A model generated the notes under the pieces. The model saw nothing but the letters and a program-made list of their open reading frames with translations. It did not search any database and was not told where the DNA came from. Shown one piece after another: positions 11,839 through 50,173 of a stretch of DNA of 64,000 bases (position 1 is the stretch's first letter; each line of letters opens with the position of its first letter). The position numbers were made by a program, and so were the translations under genes. The DNA lies in the IMG/VR virus record IMGVR_UViG_3300023179_004149, positions 1 through 64,000 of that record. The stretch is one strand, 5' to 3'.

Positions 11839-12315
11839 TTAGTTCATTATTTCGTTACGTACCAACATAAGGGCCGAACCAAGAAGATTGGTTCCTCTCC
11901 ATGCTGATGGGTCTAAACTGAGGGGATCATTCTCACCCCTTTCAATACCCCAGATAAAGTCAACTGGTGATGCTTCCACCAGTGTTCTGGTACCTGTGTT
12001 AATCAGCTGTTGTCCCAGGTCTTTATTCTGCGTGAATTTGGCGTAGTTACCCTTATAAACGATGGCAAGGCAATGACGCTTCCATATGGCATCATCATAA
12101 CCCTTAACCCTTCTTCCGAGAGCTTTATGATCAGCTGGGTTGGTGACCAACATAACCTCAGCGGCTATTTCTTTATCGCCGAATAACAATGCTTTCTGAT
12201 GCATCATATATTGTTCAGCCGACGAATAAGTTACACCATCAATTATAAAAACGGATGGTTCCCACTGACTAAAAACACCATCCCAAAATAGCACATATTT
12301 GTCTGTAATTTTCAT
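11839..12315 (-). CDS. NADAR (YbiA-like) family hydrolase
   Basis: FSQW, SAEQYMM.QKA.LFGD, KALGR.V, KFTQN, LVEASP.D.IWGI, G.NLLG.ALM.VR. Confidence 0.92.
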   Translation of the reverse strand: MKITDKYVLFWDGVFSQWEPSVFIIDGVTYSSAEQYMMHQKALLFGDKEIAAEVMLVTNPADHKALGRRVKGYDDAIWKRHCLAIVYKGNYAKFTQNKDLGQQLINTGTRTLVEASPVDFIWGIERGENDPLSLDPSAWRGTNLLGSALMLVRNEIMN

Positions 12316-12318
12316 ATC

Positions 12319-12720
12319 TTAGTTATTTTCTGATTTAATGTCTGCGATAATCATATCGATGAATAGCGGTGTGTTCCCAGCCAGGATGAAATTATTTAGT
12401 TTATCGAATGAAACCCAGAAATATTCTGAGTGTTCACGTTCTGATAAAATAACTGGCGGGATCGAATCTATTGTTGTGTAGTAACAACTAACCATAAATT
12501 CACCACTACCAGATAGACACTCGCCCACATATATTAGATCAGATACTTTTATTCCAGTTTCTTCAAACGTTTCTCTGATGGCACCTTCGAGTGTAGTTTC
12601 ATCTAGTTCGACTTTACCACCTGGTATACACCATCCGTTTGATTTACCCACTCGGTATTGTCTTTTCAGTAATAAGATCCTATCACCGACAACGATACCG
12701 CAAACAGCTGATTTTTTCAT
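12319..12720 (-). CDS. NUDIX hydrolase
   Basis: Nudix box PGGKVELDETTLEGAIRETFEETG; likely start MKKSAVCG just after a promoter. Confidence 0.88.
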   Translation of the reverse strand: MKKSAVCGIVVGDRILLLKRQYRVGKSNGWCIPGGKVELDETTLEGAIRETFEETGIKVSDLIYVGECLSGSGEFMVSCYYTTIDSIPPVILSEREHSEYFWVSFDKLNNFILAGNTPLFIDMIIADIKSENN

Positions 12721-12803
12721 TTCTTTTTGTTTAGGATACAAAAGTAAGAATTTTTTTTGACATAACCAAATAAAAATGGGATAACTTTCGTTATCCCATT
12801 GCG

Positions 12804-12877
12804 TTGTCCTGGTGAGAGTTGAACTCACTACCTTCACCTTATCAGGGTGACAATCTAAACCGTTGATATACAGGACA
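12804..12877 (-). tRNA. tRNA-Ile(GAT)
   Basis: TCACC-CTGATAA-GGTGA. Confidence 0.9.
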
Positions 12878-13387: not shown

Positions 13388-13390
13388 ATT

Positions 13391-13840
13391 TTATTGTTCC
13401 AACCATTTATACCAACCTTGTTGTTTAGCTGTTCGCCTATGGTGACAGTTAGCACATCTGGTTTCGCATTTTTTTAATTCTTTCTCTATGGTACCCCAAA
13501 CAGTGGAATATACCATATTTGAAATCACACCCTTTTTATCAACACCATCCATATGATCCGACTGGAGAACTATGGGGTCAGTTTCACCACAAACAACACA
13601 AGGATGATCTAAATAATGCTGATACAATTTTCTCCTATTCTCTTCAATTTCAGCTTTCCTTCGTTTTCTAATCACCGCTTTATGGTGGTTGGTATTTTCT
13701 GAATAATATTGTTTTGATCGTTCATTACTACATTTTCTACAAATATTATTATATCCGTCTTTTTTACCCTTATTTTTATTAAATTCGGATATTTTTTTCT
13801 CGTCTTTGCACTTAGTGCATATTTTCTTATTTTCTTCCAT
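13391..13840 (-). mobile_element. HNH endonuclease gene inserted in the tRNA cluster
   Basis: CTKC...CRKC Zn motif; CVVCGE...LQSDH...CANCHHRRT HNH core. Confidence 0.85.
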
Positions 13841-13881
13841 AATAATAAATATAAGGAAAAAACTTTTAAAATAAACACTGG

Positions 13882-13919
13882 TTAAAAGTGTGGTGCTCTA
13901 CCGATTAAGCTACGAGACC
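13882..13919 (-). pseudogene. 5' half of a tRNA-Lys(TTT), cut just after the anticodon loop
   Basis: GGTCTCG-TA-GCTTAATCGGTAGAGC-A-CCACA-CTTTTAA, then unrelated sequence leading into the HNH gene. Confidence 0.8.
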
Positions 13920-13926
13920 ATTAAAG

Positions 13927-15871: not shown

Positions 15872-16062
15872 CTTTCTCGTTAAAATACTGTTTTAATTCG
15901 TCAATGGTACAGTCCAATCGATATGATATCATATCTTTGGACATGGATAAAAGATAATTTTTAACATCTGTTAAAAAAGATATCATCTCTTCTTTCCACT
16001 CTTCAGTACCGACAATATGTTTTGTCTTCATCTTTATAGTTTTATATCTATAAATATCAGAG

Positions 16063-16135
16063 TGATTCCAGTGGGGATCGAACCCACACCTAATTGATTT
16101 AGAGTCAACTATACTGCCGATTATACTATGGAACC
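16063..16135 (-). tRNA. Amber suppressor tRNA (CTA)
   Basis: GTTGA-CTCTAAA-TCAAT anticodon arm; complete cloverleaf, short variable loop, A73. Confidence 0.85.
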
Positions 16136-19567: not shown

Positions 19568-19624
19568 TAGTCCCCGAAGGATTCGAACCCTCACCAAGTA
19601 TGCTTACCGTTACACCAGAGAACC
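19568..19624 (-). ncRNA. Anticodon-armless tRNA-like RNA (57 nt)
   Basis: Acceptor, D arm and T arm intact; D and T arms joined by only ACTTGGT. Confidence 0.65.
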
Positions 19625-25725: not shown

Positions 25726-26763
25726 TTATTTATTAAATCTATTTAAGGCGTTTGTGCTAATTTGTATTGTTTTTACACACCCAATAAAATCACAAAGTGT
25801 TTTAGAATTTGTATAACTCATAGCAGAACAAAGATAATGTTGAAAATTCTCACACCAGCCTGGTATAGTGTATTCAACTTTTTGATATTTTACAATACCT
25901 TCCGAAGTTTTTATTTTTTTATTTCCCCAGAATTTTTGTACCTCCTTGGTACTCATACCACGATACTTTTTATAAAGAACACCTTGATTCATAAGGTGTA
26001 TCATCGATTCGGTATTATATTCACTTACTGGTAAATAATTATTATTATCTAATACATAATTTTCACCAGCGCTTTCTAATGCTTTATTAAAAATAGAACC
26101 AAGCATAACATAATCAGCACCCAGTGCCAGAGCCTTAATTATGTCAGAATATTTTTTCATACCACCATCAGCAACAATCTTAGCTGGGTTCGTCAAGTTT
26201 AATGATTTGTCATAACATTCTTTGATCAATGAAGCCATCGGATAACCAACACCTGTTTGTTGTGTTGTTAAACAACAACCACCATTACCAATACCCACGC
26301 GAATATAATCAGCACCAGCTTGTGATAAAATGGTATATGTGTCTGGGTTAGCAATATTACCGACCATTAATTGTAGTCTTTCCCCATATATTTTTTTGGA
26401 TTCCAATACCGCATCACGTACAGCTGGCATATGGCCATTTGCAACGTCAATTAAGGCGTAAAACTTTTCACCCTTAATATGATCTTCACCCAGGAATATA
26501 GACCGAAAATCGGTCAGAGAATAGGAGTAAAAGATATCCTCATTCAAAGAGTAATGATGCGGCGTGATAGTACTTTCTCTCGGTAGACAAGCCTTTACAC
26601 CAGCATCAACAAATGATTGGATATTACTCCTGTTAACAACGGTATCCATTGGTGCGGCAAATAATGGTAATTTACTACCATAGTATGGATTTACCTCAGA
26701 ACGAGAATTAATATTGGTTATATCAGCTGGTACTATTAAAATATCATCAAAATCGTATGTCAT
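25726..26763 (-). CDS. IMP dehydrogenase / GMP reductase family enzyme
   Basis: APMDTV, IDVANGH, MVGNIA, RVGIGNGGCCLT, IVADGG, KALALGADYVMLG, YRGMST, SEG; no CBS domains. Confidence 0.88.
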   Translation of the reverse strand: MTYDFDDILIVPADITNINSRSEVNPYYGSKLPLFAAPMDTVVNRSNIQSFVDAGVKACLPRESTITPHHYSLNEDIFYSYSLTDFRSIFLGEDHIKGEKFYALIDVANGHMPAVRDAVLESKKIYGERLQLMVGNIANPDTYTILSQAGADYIRVGIGNGGCCLTTQQTGVGYPMASLIKECYDKSLNLTNPAKIVADGGMKKYSDIIKALALGADYVMLGSIFNKALESAGENYVLDNNNYLPVSEYNTESMIHLMNQGVLYKKYRGMSTKEVQKFWGNKKIKTSEGIVKYQKVEYTIPGWCENFQHYLCSAMSYTNSKTLCDFIGCVKTIQISTNALNRFNK

Positions 26764-27329
26764 TCGTATTTAATATTTAAAAAATCAAAAGTTTTTTTGT
26801 TAAATTCTCCAAATGTTCCTTCGGTAAGTGTTTTAGGTGTTACCCATTTAACAACATGTGGTTCGTCATAATTGATCTCACCGTCAACAAATGCCGTATA
26901 TACGGCACAGGGTTTCATACCACTCTTATCAATACAATCGTGTATCATTTGGAATTTAAGATTAACCAAATCGAGTCCTGTTTCTTCCTTTACTTCGCGC
27001 ACAATAGCCTCAACCGTTGTTTCACCTGGTTCTATTTTACCACCAGGTAGACCGAAGTCTTCATGGTTATGCTTTCGAGATACACCAAGTAATGTACCAT
27101 CATCACCTGGTATTATTGCACATACTGAAAAAGGTATATCCGTATAACCTGGTAAGTCAATAAACCTCTCGAAGTTTTCAGAAAAATCATTTTTTTCCCT
27201 AACCCATATTCTGCCGTCGATAACAGATTCGTACACGACACAATCGATCCAGATTTGACCGATCTTCATTTTGGATTCGTGTAATACTTTGTATTCACCT
27301 TTTGTCTTTAGGTGTCTATATCTTTCCAT
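26760..27329 (-). CDS. DUF1653-like N-terminal domain fused to a NUDIX hydrolase
   Basis: YRHLK...Y.V...VVYES...IWVR; GLPGGKIEPGETTVEAIVREVKEETG. Confidence 0.8.
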   Translation of the reverse strand: MERYRHLKTKGEYKVLHESKMKIGQIWIDCVVYESVIDGRIWVREKNDFSENFERFIDLPGYTDIPFSVCAIIPGDDGTLLGVSRKHNHEDFGLPGGKIEPGETTVEAIVREVKEETGLDLVNLKFQMIHDCIDKSGMKPCAVYTAFVDGEINYDEPHVVKWVTPKTLTEGTFGEFNKKTFDFLNIKYE

Positions 27330-27773: not shown

Positions 27774-28213
27774 ATTAAGTTCCTGGGCAACCATATGATA
27801 CAAGCGCTTGTACTGATTGGGAACGCCGTTACGTTATAACATCCTAAGATTTATAAGAGGCTTGACGGCCCACCTTATTTTTAATCCCCACGAACATACA
27901 TCCATTCACATAGATGACCCAGGATTTGAACCTGCAAAGTCCGTTTATGTATTCCTACCACACCTTCCGCTGGGACAGGGATAATTTTAAAAGTAAAGAA
28001 CTTTACCCATTCTTCATGAGCGGTTTGGCATAACCGCAGGGGAATCCTTAAACCATCCATTCATTTTTTAAAAGGGAATGGAACCTTTCAGGGTAACCCC
28101 TATCCTCACTACCATCCATTTTTAGGAAAATGGAAAACCAATATTCAACTCGATTGCGATAATACCAGGAATTGCCTCCATTATCAATATTAACCAATTC
28201 GAGTTTTTTATCT

Positions 28214-28889: not shown

Positions 28890-29010
28890 TTGGGCACGAG
28901 GGAATTGAACCCCCACCTCTCGCTTATGATGCAAATTGTCGTTAAATGTGCTGAATTAAATCCCTACGGATTGTCCGATGTTTAACGTGCTACCATTACA
29001 CTAATGCCCA
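28890..29010 (-). ncRNA. tRNA-like RNA with a large insertion carrying a CAGCA box
   Basis: TGGGCAT/GTGCCCA acceptor, D arm and T arm intact; insertion with AATCC-GTAG-GGATT hairpin then TTCAGCA; residual CAT loop. Confidence 0.7.
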
Positions 29011-29021
29011 ATATTTTTTCG

Positions 29022-29093
29022 AGGACACACTCAGAACCGACCTGAGAACTCATGCTTACAAGGCAAGTATTTTTCCAGCTAAACTATGCGTCC
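29022..29093 (-). tRNA. tRNA-Thr(TGT), atypical T loop
   Basis: CTTGC-CTTGTAA-GCATG; CTCAG-GTCGGTT-CTGAG. Confidence 0.7.
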
Positions 29094-29235
29094 AATTCAA
29101 CTTTTAAATTATCCCCAGAGTTGCAACTGTGCTGGAATACGATCCAGAGGTTTAGTGGCTGGTAACGTAATATACCTTAACCAGACTTTCCTATCTTCGA
29201 TCCATGATGGTCGACCATCAGAGGGCTTTTGTTAG

Positions 29236-29309
29236 TTGCGAAAGGAGGATTCGAACCTCCGACCTCACAGGTTATGAGCCTGGCGAGCTGGCCTCTGCTC
29301 TATTTCGCA
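29236..29309 (-). tRNA. tRNA-Met(CAT), initiator-like
   Basis: CCAGG-CTCATAA-CCTG; fMet-like D arm. Confidence 0.85.
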
Positions 29310-29338
29310 ATGTTTACCTTTAGGAACAAAAAGTTCCA

Positions 29339-29414
29339 TGGTTGCGGGTAATGGATTCGAACCATTGATCTCCTGGTTATGAGCCAGACGGGATGACCAC
29401 TTCCCTAACCCGCA
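29339..29414 (-). tRNA. tRNA-Met(CAT), initiator-like, second copy
   Basis: TCTGG-CTCATAA-CCAGG; encoded CCA. Confidence 0.87.
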
Positions 29415-29514
29415 ATGTATATCTTTTAACAAAAACTTTTTTGTATCAGTAAAGCTCATCGCTTTAATGTTAAAAATTAAGTTTACTGTTTGCATATATA
29501 ATATGCATCCGCTT

Positions 29515-29599
29515 TGGCGGTCTCGATGGGATTCGAACCCATGATCTTCGCCGTGACGCGTTACAGGGCGACAGGGACGACCAACTCCCCTACAAGACC
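29515..29599 (-). tRNA. tRNA-Asp-like gene with a 7-nt insertion in the anticodon loop
   Basis: TCGCC-CTGTAACGCGTCAC-GGCGA; G73; encoded CCA. Confidence 0.75.
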
Positions 29600-29737
29600 A
29601 TTTTAGTTAATACATAGAACTCTTGTTGGTATTTCTGTTATTTAACCAACTTACCCCAAGCTAACAGTTGCTATTGAGTTCCGCCAGAGGCTACGGCATA
29701 TGTATTAACCGTGAGTAGGGTACCAAGTTACTCACTT

Positions 29738-29813
29738 TGGTAGCGCTGGATGGATTCAAACCATCGGCCTTCCCTTTAGAAGAGGGACGCTCTTTTCACT
29801 GAGCTACAGCGCC
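29738..29813 (-). tRNA. tRNA-Arg(TCT)
   Basis: TCCCT-CTTCTAA-AGGGA; encoded CCA. Confidence 0.9.
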
Positions 29814-30045
29814 ATATGGTTATTTAATTCTAACCCTTTCAACCGATTCAATCTCAGCATCTCCTTTAATGAGTGCTTCGAGTGTACCTTTTCTGTAGGA
29901 TAAAGAATTGTTATTCATTATCTGGTAAGAATCGCAGATGATTGTATCTCCGTTCATCAATGTGATTTTGTATTTCATATCGTTTTTGTTTTTTACAAAG
30001 ATAAATCAAGTTTTTGAAACCACCAAATTTTTGTTTAAAAGTTTC

Positions 30046-30151
30046 AGGATGTTTTTTGTTTTTTGTTTTTATTTCAGACGGGGCTCGAACCCGTGACCCA
30101 AGGCTCTAACCAACTGAGCTACCAAAATGGATTAATTGCGGAACACATCCT
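30046..30151 (-). ncRNA. CAGCAA-box RNA variant (CCGCAA) enclosing tRNA D and T arms with no anticodon arm
   Basis: AGGATGT-GTTCCGCAA...GCTCAGTTGGTTAGAGC-CTTGGGTC-ACGGG-TTCGAGC-CCCGT...ACATCCT. Confidence 0.7.
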
Positions 30152-30167
30152 CCAAACTTTTAAATTG

Positions 30168-30238
30168 CGGTCTATCTCGGTTACGATCCGAGCACTTCTG
30201 TTAGACAGACAGATATGATACCAATTCACCAATAGACC
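30168..30238 (-). tRNA. tRNA-Asp(GTC)
   Basis: TCTGT-CTGTCTA-ACAGA; G73. Confidence 0.85.
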
Positions 30239-30253
30239 AAATACTTTAATAAG

Positions 30254-30378
30254 TCCCGACAAGAGGACTCGAACCTCTACCTTTTTCGTTTAAAGAAATT
30301 GTTTTTAGATAATGACTTGCTGTAACCATCCACTCTGGATGACTCTGTTTTTTAATGCTACCATTACACCATGTCGGA
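30254..30378 (-). ncRNA. tRNA-like RNA with a large insertion carrying a CAGCAA box
   Basis: TCCGACA/TGTCGGG acceptor, D arm and T arm intact; insertion CATCCA-GAG-TGGATG-GTTACAGCAA. Confidence 0.72.
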
Positions 30379-46384: not shown

Positions 46385-46495
46385 AATATTTAGTTTTATT
46401 CTGAATAAAGCACATTATGTGCCAAACGATATTTATGTTATTATGACATGACATAAATAAAAAAGGCTGACATCATGTCAGCCTTAAATGTTAAC

Positions 46496-46554
46496 TGAGT
46501 GGCTTTTTTATTTTAAATCAATTTAAATAAGTAGAAGATTGCTGTAACCACTCA
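46496..46554 (-). ncRNA. CAGCAA-box RNA, short form
   Basis: TGAGTGGTT-ACAGCAA...AGCCACTCA. Confidence 0.55.
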
Positions 46555-46580
46555 CATTATTTTGTAAAATAAGAAAAGAA

Positions 46581-46781
46581 ACCAGGTATCATCGGAATCG
46601 TATGTCTTTTGGTTACCCAGGCGACAAACCCTGACGATTTTCTTAGAAACCCACGTCACCGAGAATCAGCGCCTACCCAGACGGAGCATAACGCATAACA
46701 GTTTATTGGGGTCGATGGCTTTCCTGTTGCATAATTGAATTTTTAAGTTTCAGTTTGCTGCAAGTATTCCCGATACCTGGT
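46581..46781 (-). ncRNA. CAGCAA-box RNA, long form, 15 nt downstream of the Ro60-like gene
   Basis: ACCAGGTATCGGGAAT-ACTTGCAGCAA...ATTCCGATGATACCTGGT terminal stem. Confidence 0.65.
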
Positions 46782-46795
46782 ATCTTACTTCTATT

Positions 46796-47839
46796 TTAGA
46801 TAGTAACAGCTTCGTAACGAGCGCTATGTACTGTTTTGTTCATGATAGTCACGGGTGACATGTCTTCGCCTGTCAAAAGCGACTTTAAAATTGTCACACT
46901 AAATCCACTGATTAACGCCGTACCATTATCAGTTACTTGAACTGGGTAGTTACCCACATTACGGCTCTGGATGTTCCAGAACACAATTTTTGGTATTGCG
47001 TAACCAGCGTTTTCATACTCTTTCTTAATCATCTCAAGAGCTGTGCCATTACCACTGCGACAAGCCTTGTTGAACTCCATATCCGACATGATAAGGATTG
47101 TGGTTGGCATTTCTGATTCTGGCAAGTTATTAGACTTAGCTTTGTTCAGAACCACACTGAATACCGACTCTAGGTTTGTTGACATACCCCATTCGGCACT
47201 AGAGAGTTGGTTGTATCTGTCAGATAAGTTACCGTTAAGGTACTGTAACTGCGGTCTTTCAGAGAAGGTGATAAACGCGTTCTTGAACGGGCCTTCGTTC
47301 TTTTCAGAGATGTAAAGACCAAGCGAGATACATACATCCATACATGTAACGTTCGCATTTTTACCAGCTGGTGAACTCATTGAGCCCGATACGTCACATA
47401 CTGGAAGTAAACGCTCATTACTATTTTCCATATAGTTTGGAATGGCAGACCATTGCTTGTTAGCCATGGCCTGATCACCAAATCTCAATGTCTTTATTAC
47501 ATCGTATGGGTACACAGCACTCACGTTCACCTTAGTGTCACCAGTCTTGTACTTTGTGAAACGGTCAGAATCATGCTTACCGAAAGCTTTTGTGTAACGT
47601 GACATCGCTACCGATGGTACGTGTTCATAGGTGATTGAACCCCACTCGTTCTGACACATAGCGGTTTCAACAACCTTTGTGTTTTCCACAAGCATCTTAC
47701 GATACTGTTTTGGTGTCAACTTCATAAAGCGTTCTAGGGCAATAGCTTCCTTACCCTTACGTGGCATCCACTTAGAACACGTCTGTGATTTGAATTTAAT
47801 ACCCTCAAGTAATACTTTTAATGTGTTTTTTGCTGTCAT
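46796..47839 (-). CDS. DUF2828/TROVE-like vWA protein, C-terminal part of a split gene
   Basis: KWMPR, YRK, VET.MC...W, VPS.AM..Y..AF..HD, MIDAS DVSGSM, LILSDMEF-like IMSDMEF, IVFWN. Confidence 0.82.
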   Translation of the reverse strand: MTAKNTLKVLLEGIKFKSQTCSKWMPRKGKEAIALERFMKLTPKQYRKMLVENTKVVETAMCQNEWGSITYEHVPSVAMSRYTKAFGKHDSDRFTKYKTGDTKVNVSAVYPYDVIKTLRFGDQAMANKQWSAIPNYMENSNERLLPVCDVSGSMSSPAGKNANVTCMDVCISLGLYISEKNEGPFKNAFITFSERPQLQYLNGNLSDRYNQLSSAEWGMSTNLESVFSVVLNKAKSNNLPESEMPTTILIMSDMEFNKACRSGNGTALEMIKKEYENAGYAIPKIVFWNIQSRNVGNYPVQVTDNGTALISGFSVTILKSLLTGEDMSPVTIMNKTVHSARYEAVTI

Positions 47840-47954
47840 AACTCTTATTTTTTTACAGAATTACTAATATTTTTTCAATTTTCCAGGACTTTTAAGAAAA
47901 GTCTTACTATTTATTATTGCAAGGCATCCACTTAATGTGGATTATTTTTTTTTT

Positions 47955-48782
47955 ATGGAAACCATACCCTTTACTTACAAACTTATTTTTAAACCAACTG
48001 GTCAATATTATTACGGTGTTAGATTCGCCAAAGGTTGTCAACCATCTGATTTATGGAATAAATATTTTTCATCATCAAAACACATCCATAAACTAATCAA
48101 AGAATATGGTTTAACCGCTTTTGATTATAAAATAATGAAAACATTTACTAATAAACAAGACGCTATTAATCACGAACATAATGTTTTAGTTAGGGTTAAA
48201 GCCGATAAAAACGGTAAATTCATTAATAAATCGATATTAAAATGTTCATTTTCAAATGAAGGTTTAATTGCTATTCATCATAATGAATTAGATTTTGAGT
48301 GTTTTCATTCGCCAATGTTACCTATACCGATTGGTTGGTCAGCTGGTATATCCTCCAAACACAAAAGAACACAATCAATTATCCGTAAGGGTAAACCCGC
48401 ACATAACAAAGGTAAAAAATGTAAACCAACTGGTACATGTTCAACTCAACGTAAACAAAACATTTCAAAATCCAGATTAGAAACACCTAAAATTATTTGT
48501 GAACATTGTGGTAAAACCACTGACCCAGGTAATTTCAAACGTTTTCATGGTGAGAATTGCAAATTAAATCCAAATGTTGACCAAAATAAAATAAAAGAAC
48601 TATCAATTAAAAATAAATTATCTTACGAAAAACAAATTAAAAATGGTACTTTTAATAAACCAAAACCAAAAACAGGTTTATTTATTTGCCCATATTGTGA
48701 AAAATCTGGTACTAACTATGGTGCTATGCAACGACATCACTTTTATAAGTGTCCAAAATTTTTTGACAATCTTCCTCACTAA
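47955..48782 (+). mobile_element. GIY-YIG-like homing endonuclease with NUMOD3-like and Zn-ribbon tail
   Basis: FTYKL...YYYGVR...YFSSS; KGKPAHNKGK; CEHCGK...KRFHGENC; CPYC. Confidence 0.8.
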
Positions 48783-49227
48783 GAGTGTCTAAACTATCAA
48801 GAATAATTCTGGCTTTCTCACCAGCCCTTAAGGCATCAGCAATAAGCTGCTTAGCTTCGGTATCGAAACGAGTACCGAAAAGTACCAAAAGGTCATCCCA
48901 ACGACCATATTCTGGAATAAGGGAAAGGTTCTTACCAAGAGCATCTGCGTGGTTGTCCACCAAATACCGCATGATATCACGGAAGATCTGGCGTTCACCA
49001 GCACCACCACGAACGTCACGAACCCAGAATAAGGTTCTCATGGCCGTAAGCGCATCCTCATTAAAGGCTTTTGAGAAGCTGCTTATCAACCTCTGCTTAT
49101 CCAAACCCCTCATAGCGCCGATTGTGAAGAATAAATCGACACATGCTTTTAATGTTGACGAATTTGTCATCATACCATTTTCGGTACGGTTGTCCTTTGT
49201 GCGCAACGCATTTACAAGTGTGTTCAT
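48724..49227 (-). CDS. DUF2828/TROVE-like protein, N-terminal part of a split gene
   Basis: TENG, CVDLFF, RDVRGGAGER, IPEYGRWDDL. Confidence 0.82.
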   Translation of the reverse strand: MNTLVNALRTKDNRTENGMMTNSSTLKACVDLFFTIGAMRGLDKQRLISSFSKAFNEDALTAMRTLFWVRDVRGGAGERQIFRDIMRYLVDNHADALGKNLSLIPEYGRWDDLLVLFGTRFDTEAKQLIADALRAGEKARIILDSLDTLSEEDCQKILDTYKSDVVA

Positions 49228-50173
49228 AAAAAATGTTATTTTACCGTTTTTTAAATTTCGATTACAAAAGTAAAAAGAAGTTCTCAAACCACCAAATTTT
49301 TTTTTGGTTTTATCGTTTTACTGATTCATTTTGCTAAAAGTCGTACAAAAGTACGCACAAACTTTGGTTTTGTCAAGCCCCAGGATTACTTTTTTTCATA
49401 TTTTTTATATTATCGTGTAATCCTAGTAGAATATCATCATGTTCGTTCATCGCTGTTGGCACCACAATTCCTTTTTGAATAAGGGAATCCAACGCTTCTT
49501 CTTTTGATTTGCGTCTAGATTCGGTAATTGCGTCTTCAAACTCCTCGTCTGTCAACATAAACTCACCGTATGTATTTAAATTATTTTCAATTTTAGGTAA
49601 TAATTCCTCATAAAGGAATTCTTTCTCAAGAAAAGGATCCCCTTGAGAGAAAAGACCATCATTTTCTAATTCAGTTATTAATTCGTTTGTTAGTGCAATT
49701 GCTTCATTTCTCATAAAACAATAGTAAACAAAAAGAATCAATTAACCAAATCTAATTTGTCTGTAATCTTCATAATATCCCTGATCAGGTGGTTAGTCCA
49801 TGTTGGGGTTTTATCATAAAACTTTTTTATAATACCGTATTGTATTTTATTAAAGTAAGCTATTTCATTTGGTGTATCTTCGAATATTTTGTTGTTGGCA
49901 TAGTCGAAGAATAACTCACCTATTTCACAATGGAATAGCCCCTCTTTGTTGGGTACACTGTCGATGCTTAAATATAGGTGTCTATTATCTGGTGATATAA
50001 AGTAGATTTTAAGTTTTATTGTTTCATAATCATACTGTTTAAACCTGTACATGTGCAGGTCAAAAAGGTATTTTACCCTTTTATCAAAATTTTGCATCTT
50101 TTTACCATTTAGAAACTATTTATATTAGACTTATATAACAATAAAAGGTAACAATTATAAATATAGAGCAACT

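What the first reader, a model, noticed from the sequence alone, without database searches (positions are those of the whole stretch)
28890..30378. Two tRNA scaffolds carry a circularly permuted CAGCA box in place of a normal anticodon arm
28890-29010 (121 nt) and 30254-30378 (125 nt) keep perfect acceptor stems, D arms and T arms. Between the D arm and a weak residual anticodon-like hairpin (CAT or TAA loop) each has a roughly 50-nt insert: a hairpin ending GGAT(T/G), then TTCAGCA or GTTACAGCAA. This is the free-standing CAGCAA-box stem closed by a loop instead of forming the RNA ends. Inference: a permuted YrlA-like architecture that RNase P and the CCA enzyme could mature like a tRNA.
Basis: partly seen in the sequence, partly recalled or inferred. 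Interest (0 to 1): 0.8.

Follow-up and report, generated by a model that had tools for sequence, protein, structure and literature searches.

The report
tRNA-shaped partner RNAs of phage Ro60
Two genes in a jumbo phage's tRNA cluster look like tRNAs but carry an extra arm ending in a conserved CAGCAA box, the same box found on small RNAs beside a phage Ro60-like protein gene, so they are most likely a widespread, unannotated class of Y RNAs dressed as tRNAs.

Summary
28890-29010(-) and 30254-30378(-) are complete tRNA frames (7-bp acceptor, D arm, T arm). Each has a 50/54-nt insert after position 26, made of a hairpin followed by CAGCA(A). They are not isolated oddities: over 100 distinct relatives occur in phage tRNA arrays, and covariation supports the acceptor stem, T arm and insert hairpin.

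The decisive finding is a partner protein. A 470-520-aa DUF2828+DUF7788 protein recurs on the same strand next to these RNAs. Its predicted fold matches full-length Ro60/TROVE proteins and it has a MIDAS vWA motif. Loci chosen only for that protein carry the RNA or the box within about 1 kb. The window encodes this protein at 46.8-49.3 kb, split by a homing endonuclease. Directly behind it lie two free-standing RNAs with a terminal stem followed by NNN-CAGCAA, which is the same module with open ends.

As a family, the anticodon-like arm is degenerate and evolves like a linker, whereas the box is conserved. Best reading: tRNA-matured, permuted Y-like RNAs that bind the phage Ro60-like protein. 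Binding, processing and function are inferred, not shown. This is a new variant of the Ro60/Y RNA system, unannotated in hundreds of cultured phages.

The parts
28890..29010 (-). CAND1: tRNA-framed Y-like RNA, 121 nt (acceptor 29004-29010 / 28891-28897, discriminator 28890)
   Evidence: Sequence and segmentation. Family model R1 scores 94.6 bits.
28987..29001 (-). CAND1 D arm (GUGU-AAUGGUA-GCAC), identical to the CAND2 D arm over 14 nt
28936..28985 (-). CAND1 50-nt insert after position 26 (linker, hairpin 28959-28972, box, linker)
   Evidence: Hairpin columns covary across the family.
28949..28953 (-). CAND1 CAGCA box
   Evidence: Present in all 71 distinct aligned members. Slowest-evolving non-helical segment.
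28919..28935 (-). CAND1 anticodon-like arm (5 bp, loop AUCAUAA)
28898..28914 (-). CAND1 T arm
30254..30378 (-). CAND2: tRNA-framed Y-like RNA, 125 nt (acceptor 30372-30378 / 30255-30261, discriminator 30254)
   Evidence: R1 scores 89.9 bits. An RNA-library contig identical over 30151-30361 includes the whole insert.
30300..30353 (-). CAND2 54-nt insert (hairpin 30327-30341)
30317..30322 (-). CAND2 CAGCAA box (context GGAUGG-UUA-CAGCAAG)
   Evidence: Close to the context of free-standing RNA 2, GAGUGG-UUA-CAGCAAU.
30283..30299 (-). CAND2 anticodon-like arm (4 of 5 pairs, loop UUUAAAC)
30262..30278 (-). CAND2 T arm
48724..49287 (-). Ro60-like protein, N-terminal ORF (DUF2828 positions 1-114; equals residues 1-135 of full-length homologues)
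46796..47839 (-). Ro60-like protein, C-terminal ORF (rest of DUF2828 plus DUF7788 vWA domain with DVSGSM MIDAS motif; equals residues 139-468)
   Evidence: Fold of the family matches Ro60.
46575..46786 (-). Free-standing Y-like RNA 1: roughly 16-bp terminal stem formed by its two ends, with the box (46755-46760) 3 nt after the 5' strand
46494..46556 (-). Free-standing Y-like RNA 2: terminal stem UGAGUGG/CCACUCA, with the box (46539-46544) after UUA
46458..46485 (-). Intrinsic terminator closing the Ro-like gene / Y-like RNA unit
   Evidence: -14.7 kcal/mol, z = -5.7

Best explanation
The two loci are non-coding RNAs of the Y RNA kind built on a tRNA frame.

Proposed mechanism:
1. They are transcribed with the phage tRNA array and cut out by the tRNA-maturation enzymes. 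RNase P acts at the 5' end, 3' trimming follows, and CCA is added because it is not encoded.
2. This gives a stable RNA of about 120 nt with a normal tRNA elbow and acceptor end.
3. The extra arm between the D arm and the anticodon-like arm is a short helix followed three to five bases later by single-stranded CAGCAA. It is the docking site for the phage's own Ro60-like ring protein (DUF2828+DUF7788).
4. The tRNA-like body then acts as the effector half of the RNP. It brings the Ro-like protein to enzymes or complexes that handle tRNAs, or presents a tRNA look-alike to them. Candidates are processing and repair enzymes, exonucleases such as PNPase, and host tRNA-targeting defences.

Shown here:
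- the architecture;
- its conservation and covariation;
- the strand-specific genomic coupling of the RNA and the box to the Ro60-like gene;
- the Ro60-like fold of that protein;
- the degenerate, fast-evolving anticodon arm.

Inferred:
- processing by RNase P and the CCA enzyme;
- physical binding of the box to the protein;
- the downstream partner and the benefit to the phage.
For: Architecture and selection:
- tRNA frame with insert.
- More than 100 distinct relatives.
- 98.6% of cells paired against 35-49% in slid controls; covariation score 0.876 against 0.08-0.15.
- The module sits at the same site in frames with very different D arms and acceptor stems.

Coupling to the protein:
- The DUF2828+DUF7788 gene is on the same strand in 25 of 57 RNA-chosen loci, and 33-403 nt away in 9 of them.
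- It is present elsewhere in 4 of 5 further large contigs.
- Of 80 loci chosen by protein alone, about 30 carry 1-4 model hits. All are on the gene's strand, 0.1-1.4 kb from it.
- CAGCAA is about 10-fold enriched, on that strand only, from -750 to +500 nt of the gene, and is present there in 55 of 69 non-redundant loci.

Protein identity:
- Invariant DxSGS MIDAS motif.
- AlphaFold model with pLDDT 79.5 whose ten best PDB matches are all full-length Ro60/TROVE proteins, E 4e-7 to 5e-4.

In the window:
- The Ro-like gene is followed at once by two stem + NNN-CAGCAA RNAs and a terminator.

In named phages:
- Boxes cluster beside the gene in JH2 (4), Lumos (3, plus an Rfam YrlA hit) and Listeria AG20 (3, with terminal-stem folds).

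Not decoders as a family:
- The anticodon loop changes at 0.150 per nt between close relatives, like the linker (0.165). The box changes at 0.037.
- Stems have 5 of 5 pairs in 27% against 77% of neighbouring tRNAs. U33 is 60% against 98%, purine-37 is 78% against 97%, and 29% have 8-nt loops.
- No amino acid is consistently missing from the arrays, and five arrays are complete without the element.

Precedent:
- YrlA RNAs mimic tRNA, sit next to Ro60, and M. smegmatis YrlA is cut by RNase P and receives CCA (PMC4201824).
Against: - No binding, processing or expression experiment exists.
- RNA evidence is thin. A metatranscriptome contig of depth about 4 could be DNA carry-over.
- In this phage the two candidates lie 16-18 kb from the Ro-like gene, not beside it.
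- The Ro-like gene here is split in two ORFs by an endonuclease cassette. Whether the halves assemble is unknown.
- Bas63 gp130 counters the ppl defence when expressed alone from a plasmid or from T7, so at least that activity does not need the phage RNA.
- CAND1 and CAND2 themselves keep fairly canonical anticodon loops with U33 and A37, so decoding is not excluded for these two.
- The Pfam TROVE model and the Rfam YrlA model are both silent, and the structural match is moderate (TM about 0.5).
- Pair counts were made on a model-fitted alignment, which leans towards the structure.
- The first family set was collected with a pattern that required the D arm and CAGCA. This was later offset by the protein-anchored search.
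Confidence: 0.7

Rival explanations
1. They are working tRNAs with a fifth arm. The insert stays in the mature molecule, which is charged and decodes (CAU; UAA). The Ro-like protein, if it binds, protects or regulates them, for example against host anticodon nucleases.
For: - Intact acceptor stem, elbow nucleotides and T loop.
- CAND1 has a 5-bp stem with a canonical AUCAUAA loop, and CAND2 has UUUAAAC.
- Some relatives pair anticodon and discriminator correctly, for example the CUGUCAC loop with G73 and GCC with U73.
- They always sit in co-oriented tRNA arrays.
Against: - Family-wide, the anticodon arm is degenerate: 27% full stems, 60% U33 and 29% 8-nt loops, against 77%, 98% and none called among the 971 ordinary tRNAs compared.
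- The anticodon loop evolves as fast as the linker.
- Near-identical scaffolds carry unrelated 'anticodons'.
- The elements are extra to already complete tRNA sets.
- CCA is encoded in 24% against 67% of neighbours.
- The same box occurs on RNAs with no tRNA frame at all.
Confidence: 0.12
2. They are intron-bearing tRNA genes. The 50-54-nt insert is removed after transcription by a phage or host nuclease plus an RNA ligase, leaving ordinary 71-nt tRNAs.
For: - Deleting the insert in silico yields aragorn-callable tRNAs.
- The phage encodes an Rnl-type RNA ligase.
- Related phages place RtcB and Rnl near the Ro-like gene.
Against: - No splice joint appears at either insert in any run, and an RNA-library contig carries the full insert (weak evidence).
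- No known bacterial or phage splicing acts at position 26/27 on a 50-nt insert, and there is no group I signature in Rfam.
- The box and helix are conserved as a functional unit and also occur free-standing beside the Ro-like gene.
- The 'exon' anticodon arms are degenerate.
Confidence: 0.05
3. The CAGCAA box is a signal for something other than the Ro-like protein, such as an RNase processing site, a promoter or antitermination element, or the operator of another factor. Its link to the Ro-like gene would then reflect co-transcription, and the tRNA frames would merely host it.
For: - Boxes lie in transcribed spacers of tRNA arrays.
- In KVP40 a single box sits 26 nt before the Ro-like start codon, which could be regulatory.
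- There is no direct binding evidence.
Against: - Enrichment is specific to the flanks of this one gene family across unrelated phage lineages, and is strand-specific.
- The box always follows a helix strand in a Y RNA-like layout.
- In Lumos the boxes accompany a YrlA-type RNA.
- Ro60 proteins are known to bind exactly such stem-plus-conserved-strand modules.
Confidence: 0.08
4. They are decaying tRNA pseudogenes disrupted by a small mobile insertion and have no function.
For: - Degenerate anticodon arms.
- Homing endonucleases are active in this genome.
Against: - Compensatory changes in the acceptor stem, T arm and insert hairpin across more than 70 distinct members.
- No target-site duplication beyond the shared AGCA.
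- Conserved in 248 Felixounavirus genomes at 81% identity or better, most above 95%.
- Multi-copy tandem arrays lie next to the Ro-like gene.
Confidence: 0.03

Closest known systems
YrlA (Y RNA-like A; Rfam RF02553; Chen et al. 2014, PMC4201824)
   Same: - A non-coding RNA with D arm, T arm and acceptor-like stem that mimics tRNA.
- Joined to a stem with a conserved single-stranded motif.
- Encoded beside a Ro60-type protein, and also present in phages.
- M. smegmatis YrlA is cut by RNase P and gets CCA.
- In Lumos a YrlA-type RNA sits beside the same protein family as here.
   Different: - The topology is permuted: here the RNA ends are in the acceptor stem and the protein-binding stem is closed by a loop.
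- An anticodon-like arm is kept, giving five arms.
- The box is CAGCAA, not GNCGAAN0-1G.
- The Rfam model does not match.
- The partner protein belongs to DUF2828/DUF7788, not the Pfam TROVE family.
- The genes lie inside tRNA arrays.
Thermus phage phiLo Ro60 with Yrl1/Yrl2 (PMC12135203; PDB 9KOP, 9L5Y)
   Same: - A phage-encoded Ro60 ring protein with two small partner RNAs next to its gene.
- It is the best structural match of the protein family here.
   Different: - Those RNAs are classical stem-bulge-stem Y RNAs with a CGAA motif and no tRNA frame.
- Protein sequence identity to the family here is about 15%.
Bas63 gp130 (PhageMaP preprint, 10.1101/2024.10.10.617714)
   Same: - A Felixounavirus Ro60 structural homologue encoded directly upstream of the tRNA array.
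- The authors guessed that some annotated tRNAs might be Y RNAs.
- JH2, of the same genus, has the protein, four boxes and a family member just downstream of the gene.
   Different: - No RNA was identified or described there.
- The elements found here are mostly unannotated rather than among the annotated tRNAs.
- gp130 countered the ppl defence without phage RNA.
Phage T4 stable RNAs species 1 and 2 (rnaC, rnaD)
   Same: Stable RNAs of about 120-140 nt and unknown function, encoded in a phage tRNA cluster and released with the tRNAs.
   Different: - Not homologous: 18.6 bits for rnaC and no hit for rnaD.
- The stem + CAGCAA module is not in the same place.
- No Ro-like gene lies in the T4 stretch examined.
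Class II tRNAs (long variable arm) and tmRNA
   Same: A tRNA frame carrying an extra helical element. tmRNA shows that a large insert between the D and T regions is compatible with RNase P and CCA maturation.
   Different: - The extra arm here leaves the opposite strand of the hinge (26/27, not 44-48).
- No tag reading frame is present.

Membership tests
YrlA / bacterial Y RNA (RF02553; PMC4201824) | Match to the Rfam YrlA covariance model at or above its gathering score | tested here: not met
   No YrlA hit at E <= 10 over 27.5-31.5 kb or at gathering score over the window. A permuted order cannot be matched by that model, and custom permuted sequences could not be submitted.
YrlA / bacterial Y RNA (RF02553; PMC4201824) | Conserved GNCGAAN0-1G (GGUCCGA-like) motif on the 5' strand of the Ro-binding module | tested here: not met
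   The conserved motif is N-CAGCAA-(U/A). GNCGAA is absent from both candidates.
YrlA / bacterial Y RNA (RF02553; PMC4201824) | tRNA-like domain with D arm, T arm and elbow nucleotides | tested here: met
   U8, A14, G18G19, A21 and the UUC-purine-A T loop are present. Helices covary.
YrlA / bacterial Y RNA (RF02553; PMC4201824) | RNA ends lie in the Ro-binding stem; the acceptor-like stem is closed by a loop | tested here: not met
   It is the reverse here: an open 7-bp acceptor stem, and a module stem closed by a 3-4-nt loop.
YrlA / bacterial Y RNA (RF02553; PMC4201824) | Encoded with a Ro60 (helical-repeat ring + vWA/MIDAS) protein | tested here: met
   Met at fold and neighbourhood level. 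The Pfam TROVE HMM itself does not hit. In this phage the gene is 16-18 kb away, with two free-standing box RNAs directly behind it.
YrlA / bacterial Y RNA (RF02553; PMC4201824) | Physically bound by the Ro60 protein | not testable with these tools
   Needs RIP/CLIP or EMSA.
tRNA (RF00005) | Cloverleaf recognised by tRNA detectors, with the anticodon arm directly following position 26 | tested here: not met
   aragorn makes no call. The Rfam tRNA model gives only a partial 21-bit match for CAND2 and none for CAND1. A call is made only after in-silico removal of the 50/54 nt.
tRNA (RF00005) | Anticodon arm under decoding constraint (5-bp stem, 7-nt loop, U33, purine 37, anticodon stable among close relatives) | tested here: not met
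   Family against neighbouring tRNAs: 27% vs 77% full stems, 60% vs 98% U33, 78% vs 97% purine-37, and 29% 8-nt loops. Loop substitution rate equals the linker's. CAND1 alone meets the structural part.
tRNA (RF00005) | Aminoacylation and use on the ribosome | not testable with these tools
   Needs acid-gel or periodate assays and polysome profiling.
Intron-containing bacterial/phage tRNA gene (group I intron) | Self-splicing intron of 200 nt or more in the anticodon loop with a group I core | tested here: not met
   The insert is 50-54 nt, at 26/27, with no intron family hit and no splice joints in reads.
tmRNA | Tag reading frame with resume codon and in-frame stop between the D-like and T regions | tested here: not met
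   Stops occur in 26, 19 and 21 of 49 members for the three frames, with no preferred frame or length. aragorn finds no tmRNA.
Ro60/TROVE protein family (for the partner protein) | Helical-repeat ring followed by a vWA domain with a MIDAS motif; match to Pfam PF05731 | tested here: inconclusive
   The fold matches full-length Ro60 (ten best hits) and the MIDAS DxSGS motif is invariant. However, PF05731 is silent, and the profile search of PDB sequences gives only E of about 1.

The most novel reading that the evidence does not exclude
Phage tRNA arrays widely hide a distinct class of ribonucleoprotein RNAs. These are Y RNAs that pass through the tRNA maturation pathway in tRNA disguise and load a Ro60-like ring protein.

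Their freely varying anticodon-like loop would act as a changeable bait or address. Under this reading the RNP captures, blocks or repairs the targets of host tRNA-directed defences such as anticodon nucleases. That would explain why phages keep several copies with different loops next to the Ro-like gene.
Probability: 0.2. Interest if true: 0.85.

Novelty: new variant of a known kind. Interest (0 to 1): 0.72.

Why it matters
Ro60/Y RNA particles are conserved from bacteria to humans, yet what the tRNA-like half of bacterial Y RNAs does is still open. This finding matters for four reasons.

- It defines a large family: more than 100 distinct members seen here, with the partner protein in at least 710 GenBank phages and at least 556 viral contigs. 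In this family the tRNA mimicry is complete enough to use the tRNA maturation route.
- It gives a simple sequence hallmark, a helix followed by NNN-CAGCAA, for the RNAs that go with the DUF2828/DUF7788 branch of Ro60-like proteins.
- It gives a function-linked identity to two Pfam 'domains of unknown function'.
- It turns a published guess about Bas63 gp130, a proven counter-defence protein, into concrete RNA genes. These can be deleted, mutated and pulled down in E. coli, Salmonella and Listeria phages.

It also warns that phage 'tRNA array' spacers contain unannotated functional RNAs.

Tried and rejected
- **tmRNA-like mini-ORF from the GCA of the box:** no frame preference.
- **Target-site duplication or direct repeat around the hairpin (mobile insert):** own-sequence repeats are no longer than cross-member controls.
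- **Pairing of the two linkers to close the insert:** -1.18 against -0.55 kcal/mol, negligible. It does form in CAND1 alone.
- **Gap-filling tRNA missed by detectors:** no amino acid is consistently absent.
- **Homology to T4 rnaC/rnaD:** rejected.
- **Genome-wide 'hairpin then CAGCA' count:** uninformative by itself.
- **blastn of members against GenBank phages:** found nothing at E <= 1e-3 because the queries are too short and divergent. The protein route succeeded.
- **Pfam TROVE search of the genome:** negative. Profile search against PDB sequences was insignificant. Only the fold comparison revealed Ro60.
- **Literature searches for an extra arm or intron in phage tRNAs:** found no description. 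Three reviews or papers could not be opened.
- **Generic test for terminal-stem versus hairpin context of boxes:** only 2-3-fold enrichment because control rates are high.
- **A second, broader covariance model:** not built.
- **In-silico permuted members:** could not be given to the Rfam tool.
Full report
**Setting.** The window is the first 64 kb of a 320,934-bp jumbo phage record from lake water. It is about 34% G+C. It carries 31 aragorn-called tRNA genes plus a few more Rfam tRNA hits, all on the minus strand between 8.4 and 30.8 kb.

**The observation.** Read on the minus strand, 28890-29010 (CAND1, 121 nt) and 30254-30378 (CAND2, 125 nt) are full tRNA frames. Each has a 7-bp acceptor stem, U8, a D arm identical in both over 14 nt, elbow nucleotides G18G19, a T arm with a UUC-purine-A loop, discriminator A and no encoded CCA. 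After position 26 each has an insert of 50 or 54 nt. The insert consists of an A-rich linker, a 5-6-bp hairpin with a 3-4-nt loop, three to five bases, then CAGCA(A) and a second linker. A 17-nt anticodon-like hairpin and a 4-nt variable region follow. Detectors miss both elements. With the insert removed in silico they are called as tRNAs with anticodons CAU and UAA.

**A family, not an accident.** I scanned viral contigs for the shared D arm followed by CAGCA. This returned over 118 loci, and 73 hits were 110-137-nt frames of the same build. The 47 unique sequences plus the two candidates align well, and RNAalifold recovers the acceptor stem, D arm, insert hairpin and T arm. A covariance model scores the candidates at 94.6 and 89.9 bits, against 29 bits or less for every other locus of the phage. 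It also finds further members whose D arms and acceptor stems are quite different, with the module at the same 26/27 site. On 71 distinct members, 98.6% of helix cells pair against 35-49% when partners are slid. The covariation score is 0.876 against 0.08-0.15, and 18 of 21 pairs show double changes. That alignment is fitted to the model.

**Not ordinary decoders.** Members lie in co-oriented tRNA arrays in 47 of 56 loci. No amino acid is consistently missing from those arrays, and five arrays are complete without the element. Near-identical scaffolds carry unrelated loops. Between close relatives the anticodon-like loop changes at 0.150 per nt, like linker 2 (0.165), while the box region changes at 0.037. 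Only 27% of members have a fully paired 5-bp stem even in the best register. U33 is present in 60%, purine-37 in 78%, and 29% have 8-nt loops. The 971 ordinary tRNAs of the same loci reach 77%, 98% and 97%. CCA is encoded in 24% of members against 67% of neighbours. CAND1 and CAND2 themselves still have fairly canonical loops, so decoding by these two is not excluded.

**The partner protein.** Clustering ORFs around the RNAs gave one family present in 25 of 57 loci. It is always on the RNA's strand, and in nine loci it lies 33-403 nt from the RNA. It is DUF2828 (PF11443) plus DUF7788 (PF25043). Four of five further large RNA-bearing contigs encode it elsewhere. The alignment has an invariant DxSGS MIDAS motif. 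The AlphaFold model (pLDDT 79.5) has full-length Ro60/TROVE proteins as its ten best PDB matches, including Thermus phage phiLo Ro60, Xenopus Ro and human Ro60 (E 4e-7 to 5e-4, TM about 0.5). The Pfam TROVE model itself does not detect it.

In the reverse direction, at least 556 viral contigs encode the protein. Of 80 loci fetched for the protein alone, about 30 carry one to four model hits. Every hit is on the gene's strand, 0.1-1.4 kb up- or downstream. The hexamer CAGCAA is about tenfold enriched, on that strand only, from -750 to +500 nt of the gene. It occurs there in 55 of 69 non-redundant loci.

**The link inside the window.** The phage encodes the protein on the minus strand in two ORFs, 48724-49287 and 46796-47839. 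Together they cover residues 1-135 and 139-468 of a full-length homologue. They are separated by a SegE-like GIY-YIG endonuclease gene on the other strand. Directly after the stop codon come two RNAs whose ends pair into a terminal stem, with the box three bases after the 5' strand (GGGAAUAC-UUG-CAGCAA and GAGUGG-UUA-CAGCAA). A strong terminator follows them. The embedded modules read GGGAUU-UAAUU-CAGCA in CAND1 and GGAUGG-UUA-CAGCAA in CAND2, and the family consensus is GGAUAC-NNN-CAGCAA.

**Named phages.** The protein occurs in at least 710 GenBank phages of Escherichia, Salmonella, Vibrio, Listeria, Staphylococcus, Campylobacter, Enterococcus, Bacillus and Mycobacterium hosts. It is annotated 'RNA-binding protein', 'Ro-like RNA binding protein' or 'DUF2828'.
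- **JH2 (Felixounavirus):** four boxes follow the gene, and one sits in a divergent family member. That element is conserved in 248 records and almost never annotated.
- **Mycobacteriophage Lumos:** the same protein family is followed by three boxes and a sub-threshold but specific Rfam YrlA hit (39.3 bits, E 3e-5).
- **Listeria phage AG20:** three boxes precede the gene, two in clear terminal-stem RNAs. RtcB, a second RNA ligase and a phosphohydrolase lie close by.

**Literature.**
- YrlA RNAs are tRNA mimics next to Ro60 with a GNCGAAN0-1G motif, and one is cut by RNase P and receives CCA (PMC4201824).
- Some jumbo phages have ROT/TROVE proteins (PMC7824862).
- Thermus phage Ro60 binds two adjacent Y-like RNAs and host PNPase (PMC12135203).
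- Bas63 gp130, a Ro60 look-alike upstream of the tRNA array, counters the ppl defence even when expressed alone. The authors only guessed that some tRNA genes might be Y RNAs.
- I found no description of the RNA family itself.

**Expression.** Two freshwater metatranscriptome runs hold contigs identical to the phage. One spans tRNA-Asp through CAND2 and includes the whole insert. No joint removing an insert was seen in any run. Depth is about 4, contigs hide rare forms, and DNA carry-over is possible, so this only weakly disfavours splicing.

**Conclusion.** The two loci are members of a large, previously unannotated family of tRNA-framed RNAs whose extra arm carries the hallmark of RNAs partnered with a divergent phage Ro60-like protein. 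They work like YrlA-type Y RNAs, with a protein-binding module plus a tRNA mimic. They fail the membership tests for YrlA proper in topology, motif, model match and Pfam family of the partner. Maturation by the tRNA pathway, binding to the protein and the biological role (RNA quality control, RNA repair or counter-defence) are inferences that can now be tested in cultured phages.

Noticed in passing
window 46796-49287: The Ro60-like gene is cleanly split into two ORFs (residues 1-135 and 139-468 of homologues). The split is caused by a cassette carrying a SegE-like GIY-YIG homing endonuclease gene (47937-48782, + strand). Both halves look intact, with the MIDAS motif preserved.
   Followed up: yes
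window 30070-30128 (-) and 19568-19624 (-): Two 57-59-nt tRNA-like elements have an acceptor stem, D arm and T arm but no anticodon arm at all; only 6-8 nt join the D and T arms. The Rfam tRNA model scores them 39.6 and 32.9 bits. The second has a D arm like that of the CAGCAA-box family.
   Followed up: partly
window 29515-29599 (-): An 85-nt tRNA with encoded CCA. aragorn reports a four-base anticodon (tgta) for it. The anticodon stem encloses a 14-nt loop.
   Followed up: no
window 16062-16135 (-): A suppressor tRNA with anticodon CUA (reported as 'Pyl' by aragorn), suggesting that TAG may be read as sense in part of this phage's genes. Two related contigs (L005, L045) carry one too.
   Followed up: no
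window 28046-28142 (-): A near-threshold match to the wcaG RNA motif (39 bits; gathering score 42) inside the tRNA region.
   Followed up: no
window 13388-13925 (-): Upstream of tRNA-Lys(UUU) lies what looks like the 5' half of a second Lys-like tRNA (through a CUUUUAA loop). It is followed by a 149-aa cysteine/histidine-rich ORF with no Pfam match. This may be a tRNA gene disrupted by a mobile endonuclease.
   Followed up: partly
window 29094-29234 (-) and 29600-29737 (-): These are two of several unassigned 100-140-nt spacers between tRNAs that contain structured-looking stretches with box-like strings: UUCCAGCACAG in the first and AAUAGCAACUG in the second. They may be further small RNAs.
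   Followed up: no
window 11839-12837 (-) and 26760-27329 (-): NADAR and NUDIX genes are interleaved with the tRNA array, and a GMP reductase/IMPDH-like gene lies at 25726-26763. This is the NAD/ADP-ribose counter-defence repertoire described for jumbo phages.
   Followed up: partly
L014, L011, L057, L165 and other loci: Some phages carry three or four tandem copies of the tRNA-framed RNA next to the Ro-like gene. The copies have different scaffolds and different anticodon-like loops. In L080 and L105, otherwise near-identical copies differ by one base in the loop (CUUUCAC against CUGUCAC).
   Followed up: partly
L211 5951 (Vibrio phage KVP40): A single CAGCAA box lies 26 nt upstream of the start codon of the KVP40 Ro-like gene, and no tRNA-framed member was detected nearby. 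It might be an autoregulatory site.
   Followed up: no
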